Below are positions 8,125-29,831 of a stretch of DNA of 64,000 nt, one piece after another. The notes below the pieces were generated by a model, which saw only the letters and a program-made list of their open reading frames with translations, did not search any database and was not told where the DNA came from. Both the position numbers and the translations under genes were made by a program. This stretch comes from Ophelia neglecta (taxonomy: Eukaryota), in the NCBI GenBank assembly GCA_965285935.1, contig OZ260661.1, positions 21,142,001 through 21,206,000 on the forward strand. Direction: 5' to 3'. The first letter of the stretch is position 1, and each line of letters opens with the position of its first letter.

Positions 8125-9039
8125 ACAAGTAGGCCAGCGGGCCCACGGTCTCCCGTCGCTAAATAAATAATTGGCAAAAAAGAAGATGGACAAGAGACGT
8201 ATATTAATGGTTGCGAATCAGTATGAGCCACTGAGGTGATTAATGACTACGGGGTATATGGAAATGATATGTTCAAACTTCACACAAAGGTTCTCCATCA
8301 GCCACGGGTGTGTCTCCTCTGCGTTCAGTTACCCCAAAAGGCACAACTAGGGCCCATGTGGGATGTTCCTGTGAAGTTTGGTCACAATCGGCCCAATAGT
8401 GCGAGTGATATGCTCCAGAAAGCAAACATTGCCAAAATTACACAAATCGGGCTCCTGTTTTGCATAAAAAGTAGGCCAAAGTTCAGTGACCCCAAAAGGA
8501 ACATCTAGGGCCCATGGGGAATGCTCCTGTGCAGTTTGGTCCCAATCGGCCCAGAAGTTTCCGAGATATGCTGTGGAAATGAAGCATTGCCGAAATTGCA
8601 CAAATCTGGTCCTTGTTTTGCCAGAAGAGTAGGCCAAAGTTCAGTTACCCCAAAAGGCACAACTAGGCCCCATGGGGAATGTTCCTGTGAAGTTTGGTCG
8701 TAAGCGGCCCAGTAGTTTCCGAGATATGCTCCGGAAACGAAGCATTGGTGATATTGCACAAATCGGGCCCTATTTTCGCAAGAAAAGTAGGCCAAAGTTC
8801 AGTTACCCCAAAAGGCACAACTAGGGCCCATGGTGAATGCTCCTGTGAAGTTTGGTCCCAATCGGCGCAGTAGTTTCCGAGATATGCTCCGGAAACGAGA
8901 ATGGAACGGACAGACGGACAGACGGACAGACGGTCAGACAGACGCCTGATGCGTGTGGGACTTTCACTTGTGGGACTTTTCATTTTATTTTGTGGGACTT
9001 TTTGAATGTGATCTTACGGTTGTTGCTTGTGGGACATCC

Positions 9040-10330
9040 GAAGAAGTCCCACATGTGGTGCCCATCGATGTAGGTCCCACATGTGATGTCCATCAATAAA
9101 GTCCCATATACGATGTCCATCAATAAAGTCCCACATATGATGCCCATCAATAAAGTCCCACATACAATGTCCACCAATAAAGTCCCACATACGATGTCCG
9201 TCAATAAAGTCCCACATACGATGTCCACCAATAAAGTCCCACATACGATGTCCATCAATAAAGTCCCACATATGATGTCTATCAATAAAGTCCCACATAC
9301 GATGTCCGTCAATAAAGTCCCACATACGATGTCCACCAATAAAGTCCCACATACGATGTCCATCAATAAAGTCCCACATATGATGTCTATCAGTAAAGTC
9401 CCACATGTGATGTCCATTAATAAAGTCCCACATACGATGTCCGTCAATAAAGTCCCACATACGATGTCCACCAATAAATTCCCACATACGATGTCCATCA
9501 ATAAAGTCCCACATATGATGTCTATCAATAAAGTCCCACATACGATGTCCACAAATAAAGCCCCACATACGATGTCCACCAATAAAGTCCCACATACGAT
9601 GTCTACCAATAAAGTCCCACATGTGATGCTCACCAATTAAGTCCCACATAATATGCCCATCAATAAAGTCCCACATAATATGCTCATCAATAAAGTCCCA
9701 CATATGATGTCTATCAATAAAGTCCCACATACGATGTCCACCAATAAAGTCCCACATACGATGTCCACCAATAAAGTCCCACATACGATGTCTACCAATA
9801 AAGTCCCACATGTGATGCTCACCAATTAAGTCCCACATAATATGCTCATCAATAAAGTCCCACATTAGATGCCCATCAATAAAGTCCCACATACGATGTC
9901 CACCAATAAAGTCCCACATACGATGTCCACCAATAAAGTCCCACATACGATGTCTACCAATAAAGTCCCACGTGTGATGCTCACCAATTTAGTCCCACAT
10001 AATATGCCCATCAATAAAGTCCCACATAATATGCCCATCAATAAAGTCCCACATTAGATGCCCATCAATAAAGTCCCACATTAGATGTCAACCAATAAAG
10101 TCCCACATACATGTACGATGTCCACCAATAAAGTCCCACATACGATATCCACCAATAAAGTCCCACATGTGATGCTCACCAATTAAGTCCCACATAATAT
10201 GTCCATCAATAAAGTCCCAGATTCTGTGTCCATCAATATTGTCACAATTTTAATGGCCATAAATGAAGCCCCACATAAATGAATTCCCAACATGTGATGT
10301 CCATCAATATAGTCCCACGCCATGATTATA
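9040..10330. repeat. 21-bp subterminal tandem array (consensus CAATAAAGTCCCACATACGAT-like, about 55 units)
   Basis: Directly visible. Each unit carries AGTCCCAC, the reverse complement of the GTGGGACT motif in the termini. Confidence 0.95.
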
Positions 10331-10991
10331 AAACTATACACACTCAGCAGATACCCTTTGTCATAGATATGACACTGTTGTGTTGTGGGAATATAGCCAA
10401 TTAAATCCAACAACTGTGTTTGATATCCAATTAAGTTTATTTTATAACATCCTTATTTAAAATCAAAATCACACATTTAATAGGTTCAGCAGCAGATGAG
10501 TGGGTTCTCATTAACTTGAATAAACTCAACACCACACCTCTGTTTGGTGGGAAAGCTATAAATCCTCTACTGCTTTATAATACAAAGTACATCAATAAGA
10601 CACAATTAGAAGGTGTAATAACACACCCATTACAAAATATCAACCGCCTGAAAGAGATTGTTAGAGCATAATAAACATATAAAATAATATACGAATTTAG
10701 TTTACAATATATTTGTTTCTTCAAATTTTGTCTGTTTCTTTTCAGTAAATCTGAAAGATTATGTTTCAGAGTATCAAATTCACTTACACTAAATATTTCT
10801 CCTTAAGAAAGATTTAATGGACCAGGAACATACCTTCCTTACCACCTACTGTCTAAATAAAGTGACACATTATAATACTAGATATAACCCTTCGGGGCAG
10901 AGGCAAAATAAACATTTGAAGCAAATTTCAAACCTATTTTAGTGCCTTTAAGTGCCCTCAACCTGTTTCCAGCAGGGCAGGTTAAACCGGT

Positions 10992-13900
10992 TTAAACAAC
11001 CTGGTTTGAACCACCCTTCTGTAAACTTGCCAACCCTGCCCTATTCATATTCGATATTTTCTTGACAATGAGACTACAAGTCCTCCTACACAGTTTTCCC
11101 CCTTTGTCTTTACTTTGACTCAAAGCCTTCAAACACAACTGCTTGGAAGGACATGTTCTGGTCCTAAGACATTCACTGAAATATAGGTGAACCTCCTCCA
11201 TCTCCTTCTTGTCCCAAGGGACTCTCTTGGCTTTAACCTTTATTTTCTGTACTTCAGTAACATTTTTATCCTGGACATCATCATCATCTTCAGTCATGGC
11301 ATTCAAGTATGACAAATTGCCAATGTCATCATCCATGATGGGTGGGGAATCACTGATACTGGAAGGAAGGGATAGTGGGTCCAAACCTGGATCAACTTCT
11401 GTACCTACTTCTTCGCGCAGTCTCTTCAAAACCAGTTCTACAAAGAGATGACAATATAACATATTAACTAACACAACTTGCAATAAACAAGCAGGCTGTG
11501 AATTGCTCAGGGAGGCCACATGTAATAAATATTAGTGATAAAACATTACAGAAAAATGCATTATTACTTATGTAAATAATAATGGGATTTGTTTGAAATA
11601 AATACCCTCTGTATAAACCTAATCCGATTTTTGTAATCTTTTGTTAATAAAAAAATTCAATATTGTATGATTGCAAAAAGAGCACTGCCACGGCTCTTGA
11701 CTTCCTAGCAACAAACTTATGAGGGCTGAGGAAACCACCCTTAGGCACCAACAAGACTGGCAATTGGTCAAAGAGAACAACTGTGACATATATAAAGCAA
11801 ACATGTAAATATCTTTAATAAGACCAAAAAACAAATCTTATCAGTCATTAATTTTTCCATATTCCCCAATGTCATTGATGCATGTTTACAGGGCACAATT
11901 GAAATTATTTAAATCCCCAGTGTCTTGGGCAAAGCTACAAATATTGTAACACCCATGATAAGTCAATTTGATCAAAATATTTGTTGCTTCTAAGCTTCGA
12001 AGATAAACATTCTATTATCAAACCAAAGTTGCGTTCAGTAATCACTTACCATTCACCTTGACCTTGTTTAATTTTTCTCCTTGAAATTCCTTCGTCAGGT
12101 TGAGGTCTTCAACCAGCATAATTTTTGCGATTTCACATCTCTCCACTAAGCCACTCATCTGGCGATAGTGCGCCAAATGCACATCCTTTGAATGACCTAG
12201 GTGATCACACAAACATTGTAACTGCTGATCATTAAGGTCCAGTACCTAGAAAACAAAATATTCCTATTTTTATCAGATAATTATTAAAAAATATACTATG
12301 AAGCTTTCAGTCCCTGGAATTGTATGTAAAAGTATTGTCCCATATGTAGAGTCCATAAAATAGAATGTTTGGAAGTACAAAAAGTCTCATAATAGGTGTC
12401 CAAAAATAAGGTCCCACAAACAAATAAAAAAGTGTGTATCATAAAGAAAGTCCCACAAAATTAGGTCCCATAAAAAAAGTGTTCATTATATAGTTAGTCC
12501 CAATAGTAGAGAGTCCCAGAAATTGAGTCCAAAATTGAGGCAACATAAATAACAAGTGTCCATAATCTACTATTAAAGTCCCATGAGAAATAAGTCCCAG
12601 AAAGTGTGACACAAAATAATAAAGACCCAACATTACAGTGTCCATGATATTGAAGATCCCACAAATATACTAAGTCCCCAAAGTAGACTGCGAAACTAAT
12701 TTTTTTTTATAAATTCCCTTCATTACAGATTAAGGGAACTGTACTCAACTTATTGTGGTACAAGCATTACCAGAAAAACCAACTACAAAATTCCTCCCTG
12801 AAGTCATAAATAGTATTGATACCTCAATAAATAATGTAGGAAACAAACCTGGGAGAGGGTGGCTGTGTATTTTCGAAAGGAAACACTAGTCATTTTCTGT
12901 GGGCATTTGAGGTCTGTGCCGGAGCACACTGCTTTCACGGATTCGTAGCTTCTTGCACTGCAACGACCTACAAAGGAAATGAAAAAAATAAGGGGGGTGA
13001 ACTCTTCCCTCCAGCTCTGCTTCAGGATCTATTTCCCTACTTACTGCGACTGCTTGTGGGCATTTGCTGTTTGCAGACAATTTTAAATTGAATATGGAAT
13101 AGTTCTTGTTTGTATTAATATTGTACCTTTGCTAGGAAATAGCCAATTAGTTTCTGGGTATCCCATCCTCTTGCGCATTGTCGGATTAGATATTTCAAAC
13201 AAAGCATCCTTGGTATCTGCAGGAATCAGCACAGGCACAGGGCGACCTCTCTGAAATGGTTTAACACAACTCTTCACATATGATCATAAAGCGTGCTGAA
13301 ATAGAGGCCCCCTTCACTTTTATATCCTAAGATGTTTATTTTAACACAATTCAAAGTTATATTCTGGTATGCTGTGGTAGAAATTAGTCACTCGGGGCAT
13401 GCATCAGACACAAATATTACTAAGGTTCGCATATACTGTAGCAAGGGAAATTCTCAACGGAAGAAATATTGCAATTATTTATATTTTACACCTTACATAC
13501 AGATTGCCCATGCCTTGCCTGATGTGAAGGGTTCTATTAAAATGGGCAGCTTGAAAAATTAATATGACAAAAACAAACCTTTCCTCTGACAGTCATCATA
13601 TCCTGTCCTTCTATAAGGAATTTTTCCAATTCTGTTAGTTCTGCTACCAAAGATTTGTCGAAGTCAGACAAGCCTGTGGATCTTTCTGAATACTGCTTCA
13701 AACTACAAACAAATAATACTTAATAACCATACTAAAAATATTAATCATAATAATTATGAAGGTATTAAATTAGAAGATCCCACCAAAAATAAAGGCAAAC
13801 AAATAATAAGTGTCCATAATATTGAAAGTCCCACAAGAATAGTCCCACAAAATAAGGTCCCATAAGGAGTGTCCATAATATAGCAAGTCCCACAAGTAGA

Positions 13901-16900
13901 AAGTTACAGAAAATGCTCTTGGCAAATAATGCATTGAAATAGGACAATAATGCTTGACACCTCTGAACTGAGTAATTCTCATTTTTGTTGCTGCCAAGAG
14001 TGTATCGTCTGCAATTTACATTTACTTTTAGTTCACTTGCTTATTAAATATTGTGGCTTTTATCTATGATCAGAGCACCAGGCGATTTGAATTGCATGCA
14101 CCTCACAAAAGTAAGTGGTAGTAAGCATTTCTGCCAGTCTGTCAGTTTGACCTTGAAAAATGGGTCACAGAAAGGCTTTCAAATCGTCAGTTTGGCCTTG
14201 AAACATAGGTCACTATTTGGCTTCCAAATCACGTTTGGTCAATATTTCTACATGATGGTACAATTATCATAATTGTAATATGAAAATGTAATTATTATCA
14301 ACTGAGAGGAAATACTTGACTTACGTTATCTGATCTATTTCTCCTGCCCTTCTCTTGTTGTACAGAAGTAACCGTGTCTGAACTAGTTGGATCGCCATAC
14401 GGAATTCAGTGTCGTTGATGTTCTCCCATTCCATTTTTTTCAACTCTTTCATTACATGGAGAGTCAACTTCTCTACATCTTCAGGCGAAGGAACAGGTGA
14501 TTCTTTGTTGAATGTTCTGGTTGTCAGTATGTACCGGGCATGCCGAGTCACTCGTTCCCCCCACTCTATTTTCATCAGACGAGTGAATACATCACATTGT
14601 GTGGCCTGATTTTCATCCACCCCTGACTTGCACTTTTGGATCAAAGCCCATTTCAGGTTAAGTAGTGCCAGGATATCATACTTCAACCGTAGCACATTAG
14701 ATGGTGATTTCAAGTCTTCAATGTCATCCATGTAAGGGTATGCACACATAATAGTACCATCAACTACTTTATCAAAGAAATGAGGTACGAGGAAGTCCCA
14801 CATGGTTTTTGATGCATTTGAAGTAGACACATTAGCAGCGCCTTGGACATCTGTGTCCTCACCATCTAACTGTCGAATATTGCTCAGCAGTCGGGCCATC
14901 AATCGCATATGTTGCGAGGCATAATGCTTTGCCTTAACATTGCCGATGCTTCGCCTATACCATGACTCCCCTAAGGCCACTATAAGCACATCCTCCTTTG
15001 CTGTTTTGGACACTGCATCCCTGGTCATTATTGTGAAAACATTTTCAAGTAGTCCTTCTGATGGTTTAACTTTCAGTCTGCCACTTATTATGTCTGATTT
15101 GACCAGAAGCCCCCGCTTTGTTTGTGATTTTGGCTTTGTGCTTGTCGGCTTTGTGTGTGTGGGCGTTTTTCTTGTGGGCTTTGTCCCAGATATGCTCTGG
15201 ATGGAACCTAATGTGTTGTTAACATCGGCTGCAATATTGTCAAGGTCAGGTTTTTCGGTGCACTTTTTCTCGTGCCTCTGTATGGTGAATTCAAGCATCC
15301 ACTCAAAGCAGTGTGGACAGGGACACACATCTTTCTGGTTGAAAAACTTCTTTGGTCTTCGGCCAACAAGAAGTTCACCCTTCCCTCGACTAATAACTTG
15401 TACATTGTGGTCATGATCTCCTTTTCTTCTTAAGGCATTGAAATCTCCCAAAACAACTCCGGGTTCTGCCTTATGCACCCTTTTGAGATGTGGCTGAATG
15501 TGCAAAAATAACTTGCCGCAGTAACAGCATGCATGCTTGCTGTTGTAAACTCTATCACCTTTCTTCTTTGGTTGCTTACTGTGTCCAGTAGACTTTAATA
15601 TTTTCCTAATGAATACTTCTGGATTGTCAGCGGCTCTCAAAATGGTACTTTCATCAACCCAAACATCATCAGACATCTGAGAAGGAGAGTCATGGGTTTG
15701 TGTGGGAGATGTTGTATGTGGTGAGTTAGTTGACTGTTGTTTTGCTGCTGATCCTGGTGAGCCATCAAGAGTACTTTCATCAAGTCCAACATCATCAGAC
15801 ATCTGAGAAGGAGAGTCATGGGTTTGTGTGGGAGATGGTGTATGTGGTGAGTTAGTTGACTGTTGTTTTGCTGCTGATCCTGGTGAGCCAGTGAGGGGAG
15901 AAGATAGTGGTAACACAACTGGTGATGTGAACTCTACAGACTTTGAACGAGGAGTTAATGTTGATAATGGTGTGCTTTTTGAAGTCAATCTTCTTGTGGG
16001 GGAAACTTCTGGTGATGAGGATCCTAAAGATGAAGATCTTCCTGAACCAGACAAGGAGCTTCCTAAACAGGTAGCTAGAAAGCAAAATTCATGAAGAGTG
16101 ACATTTGATTTTCATTTGCACAAGGCGATTTCATTTTCCAGTCTACTTCTTTTATTCAAACAGAATAACCTCTTTGATGATGTACCATGGTCTTATGACA
16201 TAGCTTTCTATACTGTAAATACAATATTTCTTGGTGAATATGTAGAATAAAATCTGATTAATTATTTACTCTCAACAGATGCAAAAAATTAAAATGAGTT
16301 CTGCTAATGCAGAACAGGCAATGATTCGAGTAGTCTTCAAAAATCTTTGATAGGAAAAAAATGCATTTACACAGTTACTGGGATTGAATTTCCAATCAAA
16401 ATTCACTTCCTGCCACAGATTTCCAAATAAAATTCATGTATATTACATGCTGATACGAGAACCATTTCAGAGTTGGCAAAACCCCGGAGAAAATTACCAA
16501 ATCCACTAGTCAAACACGAGACAACACAATTGAATATTGTGTTTGAATAAACTGCCCCGTCCATCGTGGTGCAAAGCTACATTGGTGGATCCGAATCCGA
16601 TCTGAATCTATCTATTTCACTACTCGTAAATATCGGAAAATACCTATTCAAGTCACATCATGGCTGGTATATTGCAAGCAATGCATGGAGGATTCGAATA
16701 ACAGTGAAAGAATAGAGTATTAAGTACGTCAACCTGGTCCATTGATTTGTATATTTACTGAGGAAATAGATTTTTGCTTCAATACTGACTTCGAAACTAC
16801 AGTCTGTATTTTGCCACTCCTTGGCTCCGCCCAGTGTCCCACGTAGATGGCTAGCTCTAAAATTTGAATCATAAAAATCTGCCTGACGAGTAAAATTTCT

Positions 16901-19900
16901 TATCTAACCAGGTACAAAATACAAGTTTACTTACACGTATTATGTCTTTTAGGTGGCTTGTATTCATCTTCACTGTCCTCTTGTGATGAAATCTCTGATG
17001 AGCTCTCCTGCGTAGGCCTCCCCCTTTAAAATAAAATTTGAAAATTGATAGAACAGCTAGAATGAGAAATTTTGAGAGATTTATTGATAGGAAAAATTAC
17101 TTATTGAGGAGTTTAAAGTACTTAAAAGGCATGATGCAACAGTCACATTAACCATCTATTTTGGGGTCTGATAAAATATCTTTGAATTATTCAGGACAAA
17201 TAATGCACTCAATTCATATTTAATGGAGACTATAAACAAACCTCAGTCTTGAACTGCTCAGTGAAGGTAGTAACGGAATCACTGGTGAAACTGGTTGTGA
17301 AGACGGTACATAATCGCTCTCATCAGAGGAAACTGCAAACAAAAAATGAATTTCTTAAATAAATTTCTTGTCCCCTCAACACTGTAGGTTTAATAGCAAC
17401 ATCAATTCTGTTCCAAAACAACCAGTGGCACATTTCTCAGAGTGGGACTTACAATTAAATATTCATTCTGTGACTAGTCTTTCCAATGAACACATTGAAC
17501 TGTATTTCAAATAGCTACCATTTTAGAGGGCCAAAACCATGGCGACTAATAACCTTAATGTTTAAGGACAAGCTTTTTAGATAAATATTGCTAGGAGTCC
17601 GTGCAAATCCTTGTATATAAAATTAGCCTAACATCTACCAAGTAGCACTGTTAAATTGCACAAGGATTCTATAACTGTAACAACGACTTTTTTCTCTGAA
17701 ACACACCAATTTGTTCTGTAGTAGACAGTGGATCCACATCATGGTCCATGGTCTGGTTGTTGGGACTGGCCCCACTGCATCCTACACAAAAGAGATTATT
17801 CATCAATGCATTATCAATGTTTTGAATTAATAAAGTACCAAGTAGCACTGTTACATTGCACAAGGATTCTATAACTGTAACAATTGATTTTTTTCTCTGA
17901 AACACACCAATTTGTTCTGTAGTAGACAGTGGATCCACATCATGGTCCATGGTCTGGTTGTTGGGACTGGCCCCACTGCATCCTACACAAAAGAGATTAT
18001 TCATCAATGCATTATCAATGTTTTGAATTGATAAAGTAGTTTCACAAGACATATCTAACTAGGCTACTATTATGAGAAGTACAGGCCTATCTTATATAAG
18101 AGCCAGGCCAGTGTCATAAAGGAAAATTTCATAAGGGCTAGGTAGGCCTGGTCTTCAAGTTATAAAATATGTTCCTTAATTTGAGTATGTTAAATTCAAA
18201 TGAAACTGCCTTCTTATAATCACCTGATTCACCTTTTTCTGCCAATGCTTCACAATGTCCGAAATCAGCAAGAAACTTCTCCATGTGAGTAGATTTCATT
18301 TTCCTCAAATGTGCTGGAACAGAGATATAATTGGAAATGAAGATAATTATATCATCTGGAAATCAACAAGGTTTAATGTTGTACAATGTCTATATGCAGT
18401 GCTGTCACCTCCTTGCTAGCAGGCTGTACTAAGATTGTTACATCATCTCCGACTGACCCTACTCTCCTCTGATTTATTAAAAGGTAATGCAAAGGAACAC
18501 GTTTCGTATGACCTCTCTTGGGGATATTTAATGTCTTTAGCCATGTATATATATAGCTTTAACAACTAACAGTAAAATCAGTAGGGTACAAAAGTAGTGA
18601 GTCACTTATCATGTGAAATTGTTAGCAAAGTGTCAGTATTTGTGTATGTGGAGAATAAAAGTTAACTTATTTCTCATCCTTCGGGGTCAACCCCTGGAGT
18701 ACTTTAGGCCAGTCTTAAAATTATTCTTGTTGCGGGTAAGGGGCCCCAAAAAATCCATAAGGTAGGTAGTAGATAATTTTTTAATGAGTGGGTTGGCAAC
18801 ACTATAAATTTACAGCAAGTATTCACGTAGGAAGAAGTGAGAATTGCGGCTTTGCTTACAGGAAGCGGAAATAAGATCAAGAGTTAGTCTAACTGCATTT
18901 CCGTTTTCCCAACCTGTGGGCCGAACAAGCCTAGCCATTTGTTGACTGGTAGACTCGGTATTGTCAAAATCACATCCTTTATAGGACAATTTGAGCCCAA
19001 AAAAAGGTTTTTCGGAACCAGTAAAAATTATGTTTGTGCGGGGGGTTTAGGCACCATACAGCCGGGTTACCGGCAACGAGAACATTTTAAGACAGGCTGT
19101 ATACAATACAGGCATTACAACCATCTTAGCCGAACTGGTTTTGACTCGGCGTAGCACATAGCTATTGCATCGTCCGGTTGTGACGGAACAATGTAAACTT
19201 ATTGTATAATAAACTGGAAAACAAAAGGTCAAGTTAGCTGTAATAATCAATTGTGTTAGTCTGACAATCTAGATTACCGATTCCTTCATCTCTCTGGGCA
19301 AGATTGCTTCTTGCAACAAAGCTTCTCACCCTTGTGCTAGTCCTTACTTCTTCCCTGTATGTACATTTAATATCAGATGATACATGGAGGCCTAAGTGTT
19401 TTTCCATTTACAAGTAGGGAGCGGGAAGGGATAACCTATTCAAAACTCAAGAGGAGGGAGGTCAAAACAACCACACAGAATCAATGGTCAAATAATACAG
19501 AATTTAAGGGATGACATGGCCGTCCTAGGTTAAAGACTTAAATTCTTAATTTGAGTGCTCATTTCCCTTTCTGATTTAAAAGTCGGGGTTAGTTTCTGAA
19601 TTGTCATAAGGGCCTTCAGGCATGAGCATTCAGTATAGCCAAAATAATTATCTGCGTGGCACGTGATTCAATATTCTCTAATGTGGAGACTAGACTGAGT
19701 CGCCATGGCAAATTGTGATATCAGGCTTCATTCATGTGGCCGAAGCCAAGCAAATCTAAACTGTCAATTGATCTCTGCCAATTACTGATGCGTCTGAATG
19801 CTTACATCCAGCGGCCCCTAATTTTGTCAGCATGTAACTGGAAAAAAAGCATTTCTTTTTTAGGACTTCACATGTTTCCAGTATTGAATTACAATTGGTG

Positions 19901-20839
19901 ACGGGAAGGGCAAAAAAGTTTTTATTGCCAAAAACCCAACCCATGTTGTCCTGCTGCCAGCAATTTACCATAAACTTCAAACTAGTTTCAACACTGAGCT
20001 TGTTTACGGTTAAATCACTCCACATAAAACACAGAATATATATTTTGTTATGAGTGGTGTACTGAATAAGGTACAAATTATACTTACACACAATTTTCAT
20101 TGAAGAACCCAACAAACATACTGTTATCATTGACTCCGATAACTTTAGCAGGCCACCACACATTGTTGCCTGTCAGCTTCAACCAAATGGGCTCATCAAG
20201 ATTGTACTGGTCTGAAAATTGAAGATACTTTTTGGTTAGGTGCTTCATAAAAGGCAGAAATAAACTGCACATTCACAACTCAACTGAAGTACTTCCAAAT
20301 ATAGTACATATTGATGACAATCTCACCATCATTGCAGCTAAATACATGTAAATGTGTCTTATTTTATTGTTTTGGCTGATTAAATAATAAATGTCTACCA
20401 GGAATATCTGTGATCGGTTTTACTTACTTTGAATTTGCACTTAACTTAAACACTGTTACTCAATGTAAGTAGACTATTAACCCTGCGATTCATGAAAAAA
20501 AGGTTTTGGTGTTCCAGAATATGATATACACTTATCAGAATTTCACAAGAATCAAATCAGTTCTTTCTCTCAGTGAGGTCTATGGCTGTGTCAATTTTAA
20601 GAAAGATGTATGAAATGGTTTTTGAGGTATCGTGTTAACGACTAAAATCTTCAGCGGGTATGGCGGTGGCGGCTCAATAGATTCCATAATATACGCATTT
20701 CACAGATATTCACGCATAGAAGTATGGTGTATCAACGGAGAAAAAGTGATTCAAATTCATGAAACTTACATGGGTCTAGATGCTTGCTTTTAGGTGCAAG
20801 GCCTTGGCCTGCACCCCTTCTTCGCCTTTTTCTTGGCAT
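10992..20839 (-). CDS. 14-exon tyrosine recombinase (~1149 aa) with N-terminal PWWP/Tudor-like domain, Zn fingers and C-terminal Myb-like helix bundle
   Basis: Hand-spliced exons: 20770-20839, 20088-20211, 19278-19354, 18224-18313, 17908-17982, 17707-17781, 17242-17332, 16935-17023, 14325-16074, 13579-13702, 13127-13250, 12849-12967, 12050-12245, 10992-11437. All are GT-AG and phase-compatible, totalling 3450 nt. YR motifs are LLYNKRRAGE, VRGK-RGRPVPVL, TSVSFRKYTAT and CDHLGHSKDVHLAHYR. The PWWP-like segment is PIWLKLTGNNVWWPAKVIG...MFVGFF. Confidence 0.8.
12330..12690. repeat. Intronic degenerate AAGTCCCA/GTGTCCAT repeat cluster (related cluster at 13770-13900)
   Basis: Repeated AAGTCCC(A) and AGTGTCCATA motifs, inverted relative to the 21060-21550 cluster. 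Confidence 0.7.
17630..18040. repeat. 201-bp tandem duplication containing a 75-nt symmetric exon
   Basis: Two near-identical copies, each holding a phase 1-1 exon GCSGASPNNQTMDHDVDPLSTTEQI. Confidence 0.9.
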
Positions 20840-21550: not shown

Positions 21551-21554
21551 TGAA

Positions 21555-21770: not shown

Positions 21771-22853
21771 TTACTTTTTTTTTTCAGGTTAATAATAAAG
21801 TAAACTAGTTTCACTTATTCGACCACATATGAACCCAATGATAATGCAAAATAACCTCAACTATTCTTTACTGGGTTAATAATAAAGTCAACTATATAGT
21901 TAACTCATCACACTCCATATGAAATCAATAATAAGGCAAATGTTATTTTTTTCAACTAATAATAATAATCAGAATTTTACCAGAATCAAACTAGTTCTTC
22001 CTCTCAATAAGGTCTATGGCTGTGTCAAATTTATGAAAGATGTATGAGATGGTTTTTGAGTTATCATGTTAATGAGCACAGGACAAGTGGCCCCTGCAAG
22101 TTACATGCCTGTATTTTGTGTGAATAAAGATACCATGTCCTATAGTCTCTGGGGATGGCCCAGTAAATAAGAATTTTTTGTAAGGTTTGAAACAGGTACT
22201 GCATTATTGCAAATAAGTCTTAATCTTTTGTGGTGGTTGTCATTGGTGAACACCTTTTTCGGAACAGTAGAACCCTTGAATTTCACCTGACCGACAGGCA
22301 GATGTAAGTTATCACTTGCCCATGTGTACTTTTTACTCCTACAAAGTAAATAGAACATACTTACTGCCAGACCCTGTTCAGTGTGCCAGTTATTTTGTGG
22401 GACTTGGTTGTGGTTGAACTTTCTATATTATGGACACATTTATTTGTGGGGCCTTTGCTTTGGACACATTTTCTGATGCATAGTCCTGCATTCGATGTGG
22501 GCGATAAACAGAGAAGGAAGAAGCAAATTCGGACCTTGTACCATAGCTGCACTCGTTTTAACACAGTCACGGAGGGGCGAAATACGCCGCTTAAAATTGT
22601 CGGCGGACTTTAAACAGATCGAGTGAATCAGCCATGCGCCCGCCCGCTGGCGTGTGAAACGAGCGGGCCTATGTTTTTTGTATATTAAATAAACCAGTTT
22701 ACTACATATTTTATTTGTTCTTCAAAGTTTAATTGTTCGATCAATTAATGAGACCGCAGTACATATCAGTCAGTTAATCTGATTAACAGTAGATTTTTGT
22801 TCATGTGCTCCGATCCTACCGGGGACCCACCATGCACCAGCCTGTACATGGAC

Positions 22854-23374
22854 CAATGCCAGTCAACTCGGCCCTCTTCAAGCTCGGCCCCCTTCAAGCT
22901 CGGCCCCCTGCATACTCGGCCCCCTGCATACCTGCCTACTACTACAAAGTCGGCGCTTACAAATGTTTGTGCTATCAATGTTCGTAATATACATGCCTCT
23001 TGCTGCCTACCAATATAATAACTCTATTTATATCAACTCGCAGAAATATTGCTTCATTTTCCCCGATGGGCAATAAAAAGGTGCCGTTGACACATGGCGG
23101 CCTTCCTTTTGTCAGCAAACCATCATGCATGCATTTGTCAGTTTACCATGATTTTGAAATGTTATTTCCAGATTTTGATGTTAACGGCACCTATTATCGC
23201 CCATCGGGGAAAACGAAGCATTGATTCTGTGAATTGATATAAATAGAGTAATTATATAGGTATGGCAAGAGAGAGGCATGCATATTAAGAACATTCAACC
23301 AATAAACATGTGTAGGGGCCGACTTTGTAGTAGTAGGGGGCCGAGCTTGAAGGGGGCCGAGTTGACCTGTTACC
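22854..23374. mobile_element. MITE with ~200-bp imperfect inverted arms and an 8-bp TSD (Mutator-like, tentative)
   Basis: TSD ACATGGAC at 22846-22853 and 23375-23382. Arms read GTCAACTCGGCCC... / ...GGGCCGAGTTGAC. Confidence 0.8.
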
Positions 23375-24055
23375 ACATGGACGAACTGAAAATGGTGCTT
23401 GCAACCGGAAGTATACTTGTGGGACTTGGGAAAATCGTTTTTTCTTGGCTCTTTTTCTTGTAAAACATTTTAATAGCTAATCATGGAAAAGTTTGTTGTT
23501 GAATTAACTTTTCAAGATATCATTTGTTTTTGCTTTGGATTCTCTTGATTTGTGCACATTTTAGGGCGAAAACTTTATCCGGAAATCAGCGAACGTCGCG
23601 AACTTAGCATGTACCTACTGGATTGAACTATCTATAGATCTACCTCGAAACTTCTGCAAAATGTAATGAAAAGATATGTGTTAGGGCTGGAACAACCAAA
23701 CCAGTGGTTCCAGGTTAGGGTGCTCAATAAACAAATCGAACCCACTTGGATTTTACGACATAAGCCTAATTGTGACATTTGTTTATGTATATCGCTCAAA
23801 CTCGAACTGTCAAACTCGTTCACGGCAGACGGGAGGGATTTTTGTGGGACTTTTTGCACGTGTACGTGTATTATTAAAGAATCGAAATATTCCTATATGA
23901 AACCTAACATAACATCTACAGATTAATCATTTAGTCTAATTAATGGATGAACAGCAAGCAGGCACCAGATCTGCGAATATCGCCCGTCCTAGTCAGCCTA
24001 CATATTATGTTTAACGTGACTGTCAAATGTCGCAGACCTGGAGCACCTGGCCAAT

Positions 24056-24494
24056 TGTAGTAATGTAGGTAACGTCGTGGGTATAAGGTATTTCGAACGA
24101 CTTTATTCGGCTATATACAGGTGGAGATACATGTAGTATGATACAATATAATCTGCAAACAAATAAAATAAAACTTAATGTAAAATAAAAGTACAAATAA
24201 GGGGAATGAAGCAAACGTTTCTTAACGACAAGCATGCCGAAAATTATAAGACTCCGTGCTACATACATGCAGAAAATATAATACTTCATGCTCCATAATT
24301 TATATAAGTAAACAAATGAATAATCTTACCCAGTGAGGGACGGGATTAAATGTAACTTGACATAGTCGAGCCAGGCCAGGTACACACACGAGGAAGGAGG
24401 AATTGCAATCCAACGGGGATCTAATTCACTACATACATGTACGTGTGTCCTGTTCAGCTACCAGGTAAGTTATACCTTTACATTCGAAGCAGCC
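24056..24494 (-). mobile_element. Inverted partial Gypsy LTR (3' part) retaining a 177-bp GT-AG intron (24153-24329)
   Basis: 24056-24152 is the reverse complement of 29143-29239, and 24330-24494 is the reverse complement of 28978-29142; both look identical by eye. The insert reads GTAAG...TTTGTTTGCAG on the minus strand. Confidence 0.9.
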
Positions 24495-24524
24495 AATGGG
24501 CTATCAATCCCGTACGCTGGTATT

Positions 24525-27500
24525 GTGACACTTGATATTCGGGTGGGCAATGTTATTTTTCCGGATCAGGTATTTTTTCTGGAGGATGACACAAAGTTAT
24601 CCCCTGATGGACCAGGTGTGACTATCGGGTGCAATATTTTCAGACAAATGGCTAGACAGGAAGGGCTTGATTTTACCAATTTACCACCTCTATGGCAGAC
24701 CTTTGTTTCCCTGTTTGCCGAAGAAACTACCCCTGCTAGATCTAGTCTTGTCAGAGTCGGCTTTGAACCAGAGTTGATCCCTGCAAATTGTATGAGAGTG
24801 GTTCAAGGTCGTACTCGATCTTTTCCTAAGGGAAGAAAAACTCAGGGTTTAGTACAAGCCACTAGTGGTAATTATGGTTGTTTGCCACGGAACATAATAG
24901 TGATTAACTCCTTGACCAACATAGAAAAACAGAATGCAGCTGTTAGAGTTATTAATCTTAGTGATCAGGATATTTGGCTTCCAGCAAGATCAGTTATTGG
25001 TATCCTATACACTGATGCCACAGTACTAAATCCTGATAATGTAGAAGTCTCTGTCACAGATGACGTAATAGACGTGTCTGTTCGTAGGGTCAATGTAGAT
25101 TCCCCCACCGTCGCTAGTGTGATCTCCACCGAGTCGGACCGGCCTGAATGGCTGAAGGAGATTAAACTCAATGATTCCCTTGATATTGATCAGAGATTGA
25201 AGGTGCTCAATCTTCTAAATGATAATAAGGATATTTTTTCTCACGAAGGTGACCTACTTTCCCAGACACACAAGGTCACTCACGAAATACATCTTAGTGA
25301 TGACAAACCTGTCAAGTTACCTCATAGGCGAATTCCCCCTCACCTCATCCCTGAGGTGAAAGAACATATCGATGGGTTGTTGAAATCAAAGATCATCAGA
25401 CCCAGCTCAAGTCCCTATGCGTCCCCGGTTGTTTTGGTTAGAAAAAAGGACCAAAGTTTACGTTTATGTGTCGACTACAGACTTTTAAATGCCAAGACAA
25501 TCAAAGACGCATTCCCCTTACCGCGAATAGATGAAGTTTTAGAAACTTTAAAAGACTCTAAATTTTTCACTACACTTGATTTAAGTCAGGGTTACCATCA
25601 GGTACCAATGGCCCCTGGTGATATACACAAGACTGCTTTTCGTGTCGGTACTGGCAACCTCTACGAATATTTGCGAATGCCCTTTGGATTAGCCAATAGC
25701 CCCGCCACATTTTCAAGGCTTATGGAGGCTTGCTTTCATGACCAAAATTTTGAGATTCTTATTTTCTTTCTTGATGACATTTTGATCTATTCCAAAGACT
25801 TTGAGTCTCAGATTGATAGACTGCAAGTGGTTTTCGACATTCTTCGAAAAAACAACCTCAAATTGAAACTGAAAAAATGCAATTTTTTCCAAGAGGAGGC
25901 TCATTACTTGGGGCATTTGGTAAAGAATTCTGGTATTCAGCCCGACCCAAGCAAAATCAGCGTGATCAAGGATTGGCCTACCCCCCAGACAGAGGAACAA
26001 GTGCGCAGTTTTATAGGCTTGGTAGGCTTCTATCGTAAATTCGTGAAGTCCTTCGCCTCTATTGCTAAACCACTACACTCCCTCTTAGGTAAGGCCCCTC
26101 GAAAAAAAGGTTGGAAAAAGACTGAAACTCCATTGACTGGTGCTTTCAAACCCAGGTGGACCCCTGAGTGTGAAATAGCATTTAACACACTGAAAGAAAG
26201 ATTGTGCTCCGCCCCAGTCCTTGGATATCCAGATTTTTCCAAACCTTTTATCCTTGAAACTGATGCGAGTTTTTCTGGCCTGGGCGCAATTCTTAGCCAG
26301 GACCAGGAAATTGGCCGTGTCGTGATTGCGTATGCGTCTCGCTCACTAAAACCAGCTGAGCGGGACGATCACAATTACAGCTCCATGAAATTGGAGTTAC
26401 TTGCCTTGAAATGGGCAGTAACTGAAAAGTTCAGGGATTACCTGATTGGATGTCCCCACTTTTCTGTGTTTACAGACAACAATCCTCTCAGTTACCTTAA
26501 AACGGCTAAATTAGGTGCCGCAGAATCCCGGTGGGCTGCCCAACTAGGGCAGTTTAACTTTGATATCTTTTTCAAAAGTGGAAAGTCTAACGCCAATGCT
26601 GATGCATTAAGTCGTGTTCCTCGACAAGTCAGCGAATCACACATTGATGCCATTTTAGATGAATTGAATGATAGTACAAAGATTCCTATATCAGTTCAGA
26701 AATCTATTGTAGAATCTGTCCCCACTATCCCCTTTACGTGGCCCAGTGAATACTCTGCTGATGATCTCCAAGAGGCTCAGAGAGTTGACCCTTGTATTTC
26801 ACGTGTGTGCCATTTATTGGATGGAAAACACAAACCTACTAAGCGACAGTTATCCAAAGAAACTATGGATGTTCGTCGCTTATGTTCAAAATGGGAACAC
26901 TTCAAAGTACATGACAATCTCTTATTCAGAGTGGTATGCCTTAATGGCATAGAGACTTATCAGTTTGTCGTCCCCATGCCTATGCGAAAATACATATTGT
27001 CACTCTCACATGACCGCGCTGGACATCAGGGAGTAGAGCGTACATTTTCCCTCCTTAGAAAGAGGTGCTTTTGGGTGAGAATGTACAGCGATATTACCAG
27101 ATATTGTTCGATGTGTCAGCGTTGTATGATCGCAAAGGCAGGAAACACAAATCCCACAATTTCAAGTCTTGTTGCTAGAAAACCTTTAGAAATACTAGCG
27201 ATTGATTTCACCTTGATAGACAAATCCTCCAATGGTTTGGAAAATGTTCTAGTGATCACCGATGTCTTCACTAAATTCACAATAGCTATTCCATGTAAAA
27301 ATCAAAAAGCCAACACAGTGGCCAAAGTTTTAATTCGGGAATGGTTCCAACATTACGGGATTCCTAAACGTCTCCATTCCGACCAAGGTCGTAGCTTTGA
27401 AGGTCATGTTATAAAGGAACTGTGTGACTTATACAAAATAAAGAAGACTAAAACAACCCCGTATCACCCGGAAGGAAACGGTCAAACGGAACGGTTTAAC

Positions 27501-28508
27501 AGAACTTTACACGATCTGTTGAAATCCATTCCCCGTGAAGATAAGAAAAGATGGCCCAAATTATTGCCTGAGTTGACATATATTTACAATGCCACTCCGC
27601 ATAAATCTACAGGTCTTTCCCCCTTCTATCTGATGTTTGGCCGTGACCCTGTGTTGCCACTAGACATGGTGCTTGGTTCCCTAGGCCCCAGTGATTCCCT
27701 GGATCCGCACCCGAAACCTTCCTCACAGAGTGTTTCCGATGTGGACCCATGGCTCACAGAGCACCAAACAAATCTCCAGTATGCATATGAGCATGCTGCT
27801 TTAGGCACAGAAAAGCGTGCTGCTCAAAGGAGAGCCCTATACAACTCCCGACCTGGAGTAGATGACAAGCCCATCCCTGTTGGTGGTAGGGTTTTTTTGC
27901 GTAACAGGCCACTAGGCCGCAACAAAATACAAGATAGATGGTCTGATGTCCCTTATGTTGTCATAAGAAAACCCGACACTAACGTCTATACTGTAATCCC
28001 TGCCTCAGGCGAGGGAGAAGCAAAGAATGTGTCTCGGTCATCACTTCTTGATGCCCGTCCTTATTATAAGGGAAACCCTTGTTCTGAGTCGGTGGAGTCC
28101 CCATCCCCTCCAACTAACCTTCACCCGGTTAAGTCGAGGCATGGACACTCCTCTGACGATGAAAGTGACAGTGAAAATGAAGTTTCTTGGCATGAAGTGC
28201 ATGTTCCTACTGACTTCACCTCCGTGATACACCCCCCGGCAACAGAGGTCATAGAAACTAGCAAAAGTCATGAACCAGAAACTGTTATTCTAAGGCAAAA
28301 TCCTGAGCATGTACCTATTCCTAATGTGGAGGTTAGTCTGCCGACAGTTATTGTTGAACCACCTGCCACTGGAATTGCTACAGGTAATAATAACCAGATG
28401 CCTCGTAGATCGTCGAGAAGCAATCTGGGAGTACATAGTAATCCACACAATTTGCCTCGATCAGCAGTTGCATCTAGAAACTGGATAAGTTCTGAAATTT
28501 ATGTTTAA
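24525..28508 (+). CDS. Gypsy/Ty3 pol (C-terminal half of protease, RT, RNase H, integrase); gag and the protease active site are missing
   Basis: Open for 1327 aa. Motifs: SPYASPVVLVRKKD, LRLCVDYR, MPFGL, FLDD, ETDAS, LELLALKWAV, zinc-binding H-H-C-C (HDRAGH...CSMC), IDF, SDQG, GQTERFNRTL. The upstream frame reads EAANGLSIPYAG. Confidence 0.95.
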   Translation: MTLDIRVGNVIFPDQVFFLEDDTKLSPDGPGVTIGCNIFRQMARQEGLDFTNLPPLWQTFVSLFAEETTPARSSLVRVGFEPELIPANCMRVVQGRTRSFPKGRKTQGLVQATSGNYGCLPRNIIVINSLTNIEKQNAAVRVINLSDQDIWLPARSVIGILYTDATVLNPDNVEVSVTDDVIDVSVRRVNVDSPTVASVISTESDRPEWLKEIKLNDSLDIDQRLKVLNLLNDNKDIFSHEGDLLSQTHKVTHEIHLSDDKPVKLPHRRIPPHLIPEVKEHIDGLLKSKIIRPSSSPYASPVVLVRKKDQSLRLCVDYRLLNAKTIKDAFPLPRIDEVLETLKDSKFFTTLDLSQGYHQVPMAPGDIHKTAFRVGTGNLYEYLRMPFGLANSPATFSRLMEACFHDQNFEILIFFLDDILIYSKDFESQIDRLQVVFDILRKNNLKLKLKKCNFFQEEAHYLGHLVKNSGIQPDPSKISVIKDWPTPQTEEQVRSFIGLVGFYRKFVKSFASIAKPLHSLLGKAPRKKGWKKTETPLTGAFKPRWTPECEIAFNTLKERLCSAPVLGYPDFSKPFILETDASFSGLGAILSQDQEIGRVVIAYASRSLKPAERDDHNYSSMKLELLALKWAVTEKFRDYLIGCPHFSVFTDNNPLSYLKTAKLGAAESRWAAQLGQFNFDIFFKSGKSNANADALSRVPRQVSESHIDAILDELNDSTKIPISVQKSIVESVPTIPFTWPSEYSADDLQEAQRVDPCISRVCHLLDGKHKPTKRQLSKETMDVRRLCSKWEHFKVHDNLLFRVVCLNGIETYQFVVPMPMRKYILSLSHDRAGHQGVERTFSLLRKRCFWVRMYSDITRYCSMCQRCMIAKAGNTNPTISSLVARKPLEILAIDFTLIDKSSNGLENVLVITDVFTKFTIAIPCKNQKANTVAKVLIREWFQHYGIPKRLHSDQGRSFEGHVIKELCDLYKIKKTKTTPYHPEGNGQTERFNRTLHDLLKSIPREDKKRWPKLLPELTYIYNATPHKSTGLSPFYLMFGRDPVLPLDMVLGSLGPSDSLDPHPKPSSQSVSDVDPWLTEHQTNLQYAYEHAALGTEKRAAQRRALYNSRPGVDDKPIPVGGRVFLRNRPLGRNKIQDRWSDVPYVVIRKPDTNVYTVIPASGEGEAKNVSRSSLLDARPYYKGNPCSESVESPSPPTNLHPVKSRHGHSSDDESDSENEVSWHEVHVPTDFTSVIHPPATEVIETSKSHEPETVILRQNPEHVPIPNVEVSLPTVIVEPPATGIATGNNNQMPRRSSRSNLGVHSNPHNLPRSAVASRNWISSEIYV

Positions 28509-28843
28509 TTTGGTGTGTAAAATTGAAAATCCTAGGTATTGTACAATTTATGTTACTTATTGATTATTCGAGTAAGATTATTTGCATTCTAGTGTAATTA
28601 ATTAATTCTTGAATCATGTGTATACAGAGTCAACTAGACACTTCAGTGACTAAATTGCGACTTCGTCGTTAAGGCCTAAAACTAATGTAATTTGGATCCT
28701 TGTAAATATTATTTTGCCCATATAATTGAGCCATGTATTTTGGTATGAATTGTAATTGTAATATTCTGCACAATATTCATGTTTTTAAAAAAAAGTCTTC
28801 AGCATATTAATTATGAGGACATAATTTTTTAACCAGGGGAGTG

Positions 28844-29239
28844 TGTAGGCAGGTAAATCGCCCGCCTATTAGTTTTCTTTCACATCGCTAGGTGGTCTTA
28901 TTCCCGCCTTCAATAATTACCTTTGTTAGTCTGACATTCCCGCTAGGTGTCACTTAGCCATATGCTTCCCAAGCGCGGGCTGCTTCGAATGTAAAGGTAT
29001 AACTTACCTGGTAGCTGAACAGGACACACGTACATGTATGTAGTGAATTAGATCCCCGTTGGATTGCAATTCCTCCTTCCTCGTGTGTGTACCTGGCCTG
29101 GCTCGACTATGTCAAGTTACATTTAATCCCGTCCCTCACTGGATTATATTGTATCATACTACATGTATCTCCACCTGTATATAGCCGAATAAAGTCGTTC
29201 GAAATACCTTATACCCACGACGTTACCTACATTACTACA
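28844..29239 (+). mobile_element. Gypsy 3' LTR (intron-less form)
   Basis: Preceded by a purine tract AACCAGGGGAGTG. Ends are TGTAG...CTACA, with AATAAA at ~29189. Confidence 0.9.
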
Positions 29240-29379
29240 CAAGGGAAAGCACCACCATATAATATTATATAATTGTTCATTAGTTTGTAATTTTATAAAA
29301 GTTATAGTCGACAGCTGATAAAATGTGATTACCACTGAGAGGATTACTGATGGAACCACTTAAAAAATGACAGCTAACT

Positions 29380-29520
29380 TACCGTTTCCAAAGGCCAGCA
29401 GTGTTGTCCGGACACAGGATTCAGGCAGGAAGGCAAACAAATTGGCGGAATCATCACGTGAACGCATGAACAAATGTGATTGGTGGGGCATGGCATGGTA
29501 TGCTCAGTGATTGGCTGTTT
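29380..29520 (-). promoter_or_regulatory. Candidate promoter and first non-coding exon of the Crypton gene
   Basis: Two CCAAT boxes on the minus strand (GATTGG at ~29478 and ~29509), TCACGTGA at 29454-29461 and a GTAAG donor at ~29382, all near the element end. Confidence 0.3.
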
Positions 29521-29831
29521 GATTCCTATGGTGTAGACCTAAGTTATTTCAATTGGAACCAGCAGGTGGCGTCTGATACCAGTCATGTCCATGCCATGGA
29601 CACATTTTGTCCCAGAAACTGTCCAAATTTTTTGTGGGACTTCATCTCTCAAATTGTTTGGACTAGCTTCTGGGACTAAAATAAAGTGTCCATGTGATTT
29701 TGTATCTGGGACTATTTTTAAGTCCCACGAACCCAAAAAAGTCTCACGCGCATCAGTCGTAAAGACGGACAGACGGACGGACAGGGCCATTACTATGTCT
29801 CCCTTCCGCCGCTCCGCGGCGACGGGAGACA

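What the first reader, a model, noticed from the sequence alone, without database searches (positions are those of the whole stretch)
8940..29767. Complete giant Crypton-type tyrosine-recombinase transposon with an intact 14-exon gene
Seen: ORF fragments scattered over 10 kb splice (all GT-AG, all phases matching, 3450 nt) into one uninterrupted ~1149-aa protein. The YR catalytic positions are R (NKRRAGE), K (RGK), SxxR in place of HxxR (SFRK), H (LGH) and Y (HYR). Both element ends are identifiable and the empty site can be reconstructed. Established: Cryptons are eukaryotic YR DNA transposons thought to move via circles, and CryptonV is described as target-specific. Inference: this is a young, potentially functional, ~15-kb (excluding the Gypsy and MITE) site-specific integrating element in an animal, and the best candidate for an undescribed system here.
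Basis: partly seen in the sequence, partly recalled or inferred. Interest (0 to 1): 0.85.

Follow-up and report, generated by a model that had tools for sequence, protein, structure and literature searches.

The report
Microsatellite-targeting tyrosine-recombinase transposon in a bivalve
A 20.8-kb mobile DNA element sits exactly inside a short microsatellite and carries one large split gene for a Cre/Xer-like recombinase; it is a real Crypton-type transposon of a poorly described lineage, but the front third of its gene model, its expression and its activity remain unproven.

Summary
A 5-bp direct repeat AGACG flanks it. It interrupts the (ACGGACAG)n microsatellite of an abundant HINE-like repeat, and 11 of 11 paralogous repeats are uninterrupted there. 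Three or more other copies, 97-99% identical, lie in different flanks, and all of them are damaged.

The six 3' exons (16062-10992, minus strand) are collinear with full-length homologues from molluscs, a nemertean and a priapulid. A sister family in the same genome has matching intron positions. An AlphaFold model of a scallop homologue matches XerH at Z 14.4, and its top structural matches are all tyrosine recombinases or topoisomerase IB. R, K, R, H and Y are kept.

The 5' exons have no homology or RNA support. The PWWP call is weak.

No Pfam family matches, DUF3504 included, so it is not CryptonA. Its behaviour matches microsatellite-specific CryptonV, whose sequences I could not compare.

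Verdict: a Crypton-class element, a new variant or member, of moderate interest.

The parts
8236..8939 (-). Host repeat, left part: 158-bp tandem units (8323-8898) followed by the (ACGGACAG)n microsatellite (8906-8939). HINE-like by architecture.
   Evidence: architecture compared with PMC7492417
8940..8944 (.). Left copy of the 5-bp terminal direct repeat AGACG (putative crossover core)
8942..8961 (+). Left 20-bp terminal arm, an imperfect inverted repeat of the right arm (17/20)
8955..9000 (+). Three subterminal GTGGGACTT motifs
   Evidence: 52 matches in the window against 0.5 expected; all lie inside the element
9044..10238 (-). Array of 44 x 27 bp, each unit carrying the terminal GTGGGACTT motif
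10992..11437 (-). Exon l: acidic linker plus conserved C-terminal helical domain; stop TAA at 10994-10992
12050..12245 (-). Exon k: the LGH and HY-R boxes (catalytic His/Trp position and the Tyr nucleophile)
12849..12967 (-). Exon j: the SFRKYTAT box (second catalytic Arg; the His of HxxR is replaced)
13127..13250 (-). Exon i: RGRPVPVLIP strand after the catalytic Lys
13579..13702 (-). Exon h: ends in VRGK (catalytic Lys)
14325..16062 (-). Exon g (1738 nt): S/T/P-rich region with an in-frame 126-bp duplication, two zinc-finger-like modules, the core-binding domain and the first catalytic Arg (NKRRAGE)
16935..20248 (-). Putative 5' exons, unverified: f 17023-16935, e 17332-17242, d2 17781-17707, d1 17982-17908, c 18313-18233, X 19854-19806, b 19953-19872 (or b' 19953-19806), a 20248-20088 (or -20090; weak PWWP-like start)
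   Evidence: no homologue match
22828..23374 (.). MITE-like piece present here and in copy C3 but absent from copy C1b
24048..29236 (+). Nested Gypsy-like element (RT, RNase H, integrase). Absent from copies C3 and C1b, so not part of the ancestral element.
29741..29760 (-). Right 20-bp terminal arm
29763..29767 (.). Right copy of the direct repeat AGACG
29768..29835 (-). Host repeat, right part: the rest of the microsatellite and the GC-rich palindromic end

Best explanation
Window 8940-29767 is one copy of a low-copy Crypton-class DNA transposon. The ancestral element was about 15.6 kb; a 5.2-kb Gypsy-like element was inserted later.

Its single gene, on the minus strand, encodes a protein of roughly 900-1150 aa. 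The layout is a variable N-terminal part, two zinc-finger-like modules, a two-domain tyrosine recombinase, and a C-terminal helical domain.

Inferred mechanism:
- The recombinase excises the element as a circle.
- On the circle the two ends join into a lox/FRT-like site: two 20-bp inverted arms around a short spacer that contains AGAC.
- That site recombines with chromosomal sequence that resembles the spacer, namely the ACAGACGG units of (ACGG/ACAG)n microsatellites.
- This leaves the shared 3-5 bp core, (A)GAC(G), at both junctions and no true target-site duplication.
- The subterminal GTGGGACTT motifs and the 44-unit array are probably accessory binding sites.

Shown: mobility, borders, empty site, target type, recombinase fold in the family, and the conserved R-K-R-H-Y residues.

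Inferred: the circle, the crossover position, the role of the array, expression, and current activity.
For: - Borders and empty site. In 11/11 paralogous host repeats the microsatellite runs on uninterrupted.
- Other copies: 97-99% identical, in different flanks. Four of four informative left flanks end in an ACGG-type motif, and two of three complete copies sit in the same position of different host-repeat copies. Those flanks are 90-93% identical against 97-99% for the element.
- Gene: the only long ORFs are this gene and the nested Gypsy-like pol. Exons g-l are collinear with full-length homologues, and a 42-57%-identical sister family has introns at matching positions.
- Fold: the AF2 model of homologue P0013 has pLDDT 74.6. 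Foldseek's top hits are all tyrosine recombinases. VIA-align gives Z 14.4 to XerH over 306 residues spanning both domains, and Z 10-13 to XerA, IntI, Cre, lambda Int, Tn1549 Int and topoisomerase IB.
- Catalytic blocks: the window's exon pieces align with conserved R, K, R, H and Y.
- Ends: arms are 17/20 complementary, alignment score 40 against 19 +/- 3.7 for shuffles. The joined ends are symmetric about AAAG, and the AGACG repeat lies in the spacer.
- Literature: Cryptons have short terminal direct repeats regarded as recombination substrates (PMC3212892). Some CryptonV families insert in microsatellites (PMC8869645).
Against: - No RNA evidence exists: no RNA run holds the stretch.
- The 5' third of the gene is unverified, so the start codon and promoter are unknown.
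- The His of the canonical R-H-R-Y tetrad is missing family-wide.
- No Pfam recombinase model reaches significance. The best is one homologue at E 0.038 to Phage_integrase. A profile search of PDB sequences found nothing.
- The fold evidence comes from a homologue, not from the window's own joined protein.
- Only five left and three right ends were found in the genome. The three other copies are damaged, so the family may be extinct.
- The core shared by the two ends is only 3 bp in copy C1b, whose right flank is not a microsatellite.
Confidence: 0.8

Rival explanations
1. The element is a genuine Crypton-type relic but this copy is no longer functional. Possible reasons are that the 5' region does not form a working gene, that the recombinase is catalytically impaired without the HxxR His, or that the nested 5.2-kb insertion, the MITE and the repeat expansions have inactivated it.
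For: - The 5' exons lack any support, and one junction needs a 17-nt intron.
- The His is absent.
- All other copies are broken, and only 3-5 ends exist in 762 Mb.
- There are no non-autonomous derivatives with these ends.
Against: - Exons g-l are complete and open, and cover homologue P0008 from residue 488 to 1220 of 1226 without a gap.
- The His substitution is family-wide across hundreds of open homologues in several phyla. That argues it is tolerated rather than a decay product.
- Clearly decayed members such as P0094 look different, having lost R, K, H and Y together.
- The nested Gypsy-like element lies outside the gene.
Confidence: 0.35
2. The termini belong to a cut-and-paste (DDE) TIR transposon with subterminal repeats. 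The recombinase gene is a passenger, moved in trans by a transposase encoded elsewhere.
For: - The ends carry about 20-bp imperfect inverted repeats and many subterminal GTGGGACTT motifs, an architecture that recalls CACTA/hAT-type elements.
- The literature reports no terminal repeats for animal Cryptons (PMC3212892).
- MITE-like pieces with similar motifs lie in the introns.
Against: - The inverted arms do not start at the element's ends. The right end carries extra bases (AAAG-AC) beyond the arm, and these belong to the element in all three copies.
- No target-site duplication beyond the 3-5 bp shared with the microsatellite.
- The insertion sites are sequence-specific.
- Every copy carries the recombinase gene and no DDE ORF.
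- No short derivatives with these ends were found.
Confidence: 0.07
3. It is a host (domesticated) recombinase-derived gene in a repeat-rich region, copied by segmental duplication rather than transposition.
For: - Relatives in RefSeq are annotated as ordinary 'uncharacterized protein LOC...' genes, some with several isoforms or fused to BRCT, SET or BSD domains.
- The gene has many introns, some of them at positions shared with a distant sister family.
Against: - The copies end at the same nucleotides on both sides and lie in unrelated flanks.
- The interrupted host repeat is intact at 11/11 paralogous sites.
- The genome holds 61 or more loci of the superfamily, in several families that each have near-identical copies.
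Confidence: 0.03

Closest known systems
CryptonV (microsatellite-specific Crypton DNA transposons; Kapitonov & Jurka, Repbase Reports 2012, as cited in PMC8869645)
   Same: A DNA element that encodes only a tyrosine recombinase and inserts specifically in microsatellites.
   Different: CryptonV was described from cnidarians, whereas this element is in a bivalve-type genome. Sequence relatedness could not be tested because no Repbase sequences are on hand. Whether CryptonV has inverted arms, a motif array, zinc fingers or a C-terminal domain is not known to me.
CryptonA / CryptonI of animals (Kojima & Jurka 2011, PMC3212892)
   Same: Animal DNA transposons with a single, intron-containing recombinase gene, no RT and low copy number.
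   Different: CryptonA recombinases are the DUF3504 family. Here neither the window's exons nor 28 homologues match DUF3504. The genome's 27 DUF3504 loci are all elsewhere. Animal Cryptons were reported to lack a C-terminal domain and terminal repeats; this one has a conserved C-terminal domain, zinc fingers, 20-bp inverted arms and a 5-bp direct repeat.
CryptonF / CryptonS of fungi and stramenopiles (Goodwin et al. 2003; PMC3212892)
   Same: Short (4-6 bp) terminal direct repeats regarded as the recombination substrate; a proposed circular intermediate; an extra C-terminal DNA-binding domain (GCR1_C in CryptonF).
   Different: Different hosts. The C-terminal domain here gives no GCR1_C match, only weak Myb-like hints. 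The element is far larger and has far more introns.
Cre-loxP, Flp-FRT, XerC/D-dif and lambda Int-att site-specific recombination
   Same: A two-domain recombinase fold (Z 10-14), with R, K, R, H/W and Y at the expected blocks. The predicted site consists of two inverted arms around a short spacer in which the exchange takes place.
   Different: No detectable sequence similarity. The His of HxxR is absent. The partner site is a microsatellite sharing only about 5-6 of 8 spacer positions. Large N- and C-terminal extensions are present.

Membership tests
Crypton class (DNA transposons that encode a tyrosine recombinase) | Encodes a protein with the tyrosine-recombinase fold, the Tyr nucleophile and both catalytic Arg | tested here: met
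   The fold was shown on homologue P0013, which is 37-52% identical to the window's exons. The window's exon pieces align to the conserved R, K, R, H and Y blocks. The joined window protein itself was not folded.
Crypton class (DNA transposons that encode a tyrosine recombinase) | Complete R-H-R-Y tetrad, i.e. the His of the HxxR box (criterion used in PMC3212892) | tested here: not met
   The residue three positions before the second Arg is V in the window and V/T/I/N/R in 14 relatives. The assignment rests on motif register, not on a structural superposition.
Crypton class (DNA transposons that encode a tyrosine recombinase) | No reverse transcriptase or other transposase in the element | tested here: met
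   The only RT/integrase ORF belongs to the nested Gypsy-like element, which copies C3 and C1b lack.
Crypton class (DNA transposons that encode a tyrosine recombinase) | Dispersed copies with defined ends and short terminal direct repeats, no LTRs | tested here: met
   Four or more copies exist. The direct repeat is AGACG here, GACG in C3 and GAC in C1b.
Crypton class (DNA transposons that encode a tyrosine recombinase) | Movement through an excised circle | not testable with these tools
   Only assembly contigs of one DNA sample were available.
CryptonV | Insertion specifically in microsatellites | tested here: met
   Two of three complete copies lie in the (ACGG/ACAG)n tract of host repeats. 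Four of four informative left flanks end in an ACGG-type motif.
CryptonV | Recombinase sequence groups with the Repbase CryptonV proteins | not testable with these tools
   No Repbase sequences are available. Named homologues come from molluscs, a nemertean, a priapulid and beetles. No cnidarian was seen among the named hits.
CryptonA (DUF3504 recombinases) | Match to Pfam DUF3504 (PF12012) | tested here: not met
   No hit for the window's exons or for 28 homologues, scanned at E up to 10 for the exon pieces and A1 members and up to 0.01 for the rest. The 27 DUF3504 loci of this genome do not coincide with any of the 61 loci of this family.
DIRS/Ngaro-type tyrosine-recombinase retroelements | RT/RNase H encoded together with the recombinase, and split or inverted long terminal repeats | tested here: not met
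   The ancestral element has no RT. The arms are only 20 bp. This family's loci are not among the genome's Phage_integrase-type loci.

The most novel reading that the evidence does not exclude
This may be the first anatomically resolved member of a protostome-wide recombinase transposon lineage that current domain libraries do not recognise and that may not be in Repbase. The single-exon query found 1,819 homologues at E <= 0.001, and every hit that carries a source name is labelled 'uncharacterized' or 'hypothetical'.

The lineage has a non-canonical active site without the HxxR His. A lox-like site forms only on the excised circle. Targeting works through spacer homology to a microsatellite. 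N-terminal chromatin modules (PWWP-like, BRCT, SET, BSD) are swapped between members.

If the recombinase is active, it would be a natural animal site-specific integrase with a definable recombination site of about 48 bp.
Probability: 0.3. Interest if true: 0.75.

Novelty: new variant of a known kind. Interest (0 to 1): 0.52.

Why it matters
How Cryptons recognise their ends and targets is essentially unknown. The literature reports no terminal repeats for animal Cryptons, and their boundaries are called hard to define.

This copy gives nucleotide-exact ends and a directly observed empty site. It also gives a concrete, testable model: two 20-bp inverted arms around a spacer that resembles the target microsatellite unit.

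The protein family is large, is annotated only as 'uncharacterized' across several phyla, and is missed by Pfam. Recombinase-encoding transposons in molluscs are therefore probably under-counted.

If the enzyme is active, it would interest people who look for eukaryotic site-specific integrases. If the family turns out to be CryptonV already in Repbase, the added value shrinks to the end and target anatomy.

Tried and rejected
- Pfam on every exon piece and on 28 homologues gave no recombinase family. The weak hits were PWWP E 0.064 on exon a, Phage_integrase E 0.038 in one homologue, and Myb E 0.018 in two.
- A profile search of PDB sequences with alignment A1 found nothing relevant.
- The RNA check failed. 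The run search returned three DNA contig sets from a single sample and no RNA.
- Laying those contigs on 29200-31200 gave only fragmentary pieces from paralogous copies. It showed no joints and nothing about hemizygosity.
- A protein-atlas look-up of the C-terminal domain gave no usable hit.
- dN/dS between copies rests on too few substitutions to mean anything (4-11 per comparison).
- The ends of the sister family (C7:74.2 Mb, C7:62.5 Mb, C12:34.0 Mb) could not be resolved. That element is longer than 23 kb and ran off the fetched DNA. One end abuts (AT)n in one copy only, so it gives no support for general microsatellite targeting.
- Taxon names for more distant homologues were not on record.
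- All searches used single exons by reference or natural homologues.
- On the nested Gypsy-like element I only observed.

Full report
SETTING. The window is G000:C1:21142001-21206000 of a 762-Mb, 223-contig animal assembly. The closest named relatives of the gene are from scallops, mussels, oysters, clams and gastropods. The repeats are of bivalve type.

BORDERS AND EMPTY SITE.
- On the left, a 3.6-unit array of 158-bp repeats (8323-8898) runs into an (ACGGACAG)n tract. After AGACG (8940-8944) new sequence starts.
- On the right, the element ends in a second AGACG (29763-29767). The microsatellite then resumes and leads into a GC-rich palindromic 60-bp end.
- I fetched 11 other copies of that right-hand repeat end. 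In all 11 the tandem-repeat unit, the microsatellite and the palindromic end are contiguous.
- Removing 8945-29767 from the window gives the same structure.
- The host repeat has the architecture of bivalve HINEs (Helentron non-autonomous elements). Their microsatellite motif GTCY is the reverse complement of ACGG/ACAG (PMC7492417). This is a match by architecture only.

MOBILITY.
- The left 111 bp occur at four other places and the right 216 bp at two.
- Left and right ends co-occur in the right order and orientation at C1:19,452,669-19,478,424 and at C3:1,323,940-1,365,336.
- A third copy on C8 has the left end and the 3' two thirds of the gene.
- Internal identity is 97-99%. The flanks are unrelated except in C3, where the element sits at the same position of another host-repeat copy. 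There the flanks are 90-93% identical, so this was an independent insertion.
- Four of four informative left flanks end in an ACGG-type motif.
- The bases shared by the two junctions are AGACG here, GACG in C3 and GAC in C1b.
- All other copies are damaged. C1b lacks exon l and has a 1.1-kb insertion in putative exon b. C3 has lost most exons and gained two inserts of more than 10 kb. C8 lacks everything upstream of 15764.
- Copies C3 and C1b run straight from 24047 to 29237. The Gypsy-like element at 24048-29236 is therefore a later insertion in this copy.
- A 547-bp MITE-like piece (22828-23374) is missing from C1b.
- The ancestral element is thus about 15.6 kb.

THE GENE.
- The only long ORFs in the element are the 577-aa ORF at 16054-14321 and the nested pol.
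- Downstream of that ORF, five further exons follow with GT-AG borders and matching phases.
- Full-length homologues align collinearly to exactly these six pieces. Pecten maximus P0008 is covered from residue 488 to 1220 of 1226. Mya, Tubulanus, Mizuhopecten, Littorina, Patella and Mytilus proteins behave the same way.
- A sister family in this genome, 42-57% identical, shows the same six pieces in the same order, separated by introns at matching positions. Exons g-l are therefore real coding exons with old introns.
Exons c, d (twice, inside a 201-bp tandem repeat), e, f and g are phase-compatible. So are a and b. A 49-nt exon at 19854-19806 brings the total to 3450 nt.
- That 49-nt exon starts 17 nt after the donor of exon b, which is too short for an animal intron. 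Thirty-three other exon candidates satisfy the same phase.
- A simpler model (a ending at 20090, b' 19953-19806) is also open and phase-consistent.
- None of about 240 homologues matches anything between 16.1 and 20.4 kb.
- The PWWP reading rests on E 0.064 for exon a alone. It gains some plausibility from a Lottia family member with a PWWP-like N-terminus (E 0.0035; named 'PWWP domain-containing' by UniProt). Other members carry BRCT, SET or BSD domains at the N-terminus.
- No RNA run was available.

IS IT A TYROSINE RECOMBINASE?
- Sequence libraries are silent: no Pfam family, DUF3504 included, and no PDB sequence match.
- phmmer on 1.84 billion representatives found 1,819 relatives.
- An AlphaFold2 model of the Mizuhopecten homologue P0013 (16-sequence alignment, mean pLDDT 74.6) retrieves only tyrosine recombinases and type IB topoisomerases.
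- Foldseek's best hits are XerH and XerA at E of about 1e-3.
- VIA-align gives Z 14.4 to XerH, with 306 aligned residues covering both the core-binding and the catalytic domain. It gives Z 10-13 to XerA, IntI, Cre, Tre, lambda Int, Tn1549 Int and topoisomerase IB.
- The window's exon pieces, added one by one to the family alignment, carry the conserved blocks NKRR-GE, RGK, (F/M/L)RKY-AT, HLGH and HY-R. These give R, K, R, H and Y.
- The position of the HxxR His is V here and is variable in the family.
- One relative (P0094) has lost R, K, H and Y together, which shows what real decay looks like.

ENDS AND PROPOSED MECHANISM.
- The first 20 bp and the reverse complement of the last 20 bp before the spacer match at 17/20. 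The alignment score is 40, against 19 +/- 3.7 for shuffled sequence with a maximum of 32.
- The arms are not at the very tips. The right end carries AAAG-AC beyond its arm in all three copies. This is not what a cut-and-paste TIR element looks like.
- It is what a lox- or att-type site split by integration looks like. Joining the ends through the shared core gives two inverted arms symmetric about AAAG, with AGAC(G) in the spacer.
- The spacer region AAAGACGC resembles the microsatellite unit ACAGACGG at 6 of 8 positions.
- I therefore infer excision to a circle, then recombinase-mediated exchange between the circle's site and spacer-like microsatellite units.
- GTGGGACTT, part of each arm, occurs 52 times in the window against 0.5 expected. 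All 52 lie inside the element. Forty-one of them lie in the left subterminal region and the 27-bp x 44 array (8955-10193). These are likely accessory binding sites.

CLASSIFICATION.
- By the operational definition the element behaves as a Crypton: recombinase only, no RT, short terminal direct repeats, dispersed copies.
- It is not CryptonA. There is no DUF3504 match, and the genome's 27 DUF3504 loci and 93 Phage_integrase-type loci are all elsewhere.
- Its microsatellite specificity matches what is reported for CryptonV (PMC8869645). Sequence membership could not be tested.
- It differs from published descriptions of animal Cryptons ('no C-terminal domain', 'no terminal repeats', PMC3212892). 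The differences are the inverted arms, the zinc fingers, a conserved C-terminal helical domain and the missing His.

VERDICT. The claims 'intact 14-exon', 'potentially functional' and 'undescribed' go beyond the evidence.

Noticed in passing
window 24048-29236: The nested Gypsy-like element (RT, RNase H, integrase ORF of 1327 aa) is bounded by inverted, not direct, terminal repeats: its first ~450 bp match its last ~260 bp in reverse orientation at 98-100%. Compared with the empty site in copies C3 and C1b, it shows no clear target-site duplication. I observed only.
   Followed up: partly
window 8236-8939 and 29768-29835; loci L025-L035: The host repeat is very abundant (172 candidates at the first look). 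It consists of 158-bp tandem units, an (ACGGACAG)n tract and a GC-rich palindromic ~60-bp end. This is the architecture of Helentron-derived HINEs of bivalves.
   Followed up: partly
window 17636-18038: A 201-bp tandem repeat (2 units here, at least 5 in copy C1b) contains the putative 75-nt exon d. If that exon is real, the protein has a variable number of 25-aa repeats.
   Followed up: partly
window 15645-15890: An in-frame 126-bp (42-aa) tandem duplication in the S/T/P-rich part of exon g. In copies C1b and C8 the alignment skips window 15765-15974, which suggests a shorter repeat there.
   Followed up: partly
G000:C7:74206001-74236000, C7:62505001-62535000, C12:34019001-34049000 (L036-L044): A sister family with matching intron positions (recombinase exon pieces 40-64% identical). 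Two copies share more than 23 kb at 98-99% identity, so these elements may be even larger. One end abuts an (AT)n tract in one copy. They carry no GTGGGACTT motifs at the ends.
   Followed up: partly
proteins P0002 (2100 aa) and P0018 (2896 aa): Database proteins that hold three copies of the zinc-finger module and four of the C-terminal module of this family, without the recombinase part. The two modules therefore behave as independent domains.
   Followed up: no
window 12300-12720, 13760-14000, 21088-21500: MITE-like pieces in introns and upstream of the gene, rich in GTGGGAC and ATGGACAC motifs like the element's own subterminal regions. They may be related non-autonomous debris.
   Followed up: no
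G000, whole genome: Three separate sets of recombinase loci coexist: 61 or more of this Pfam-invisible family, 27 or more DUF3504 (CryptonA-type) and 93 or more Phage_integrase-type. Many have open frames.
   Followed up: partly
window 2325-2424: A run of 100 N (assembly gap or masked). Left untouched.
   Followed up: no
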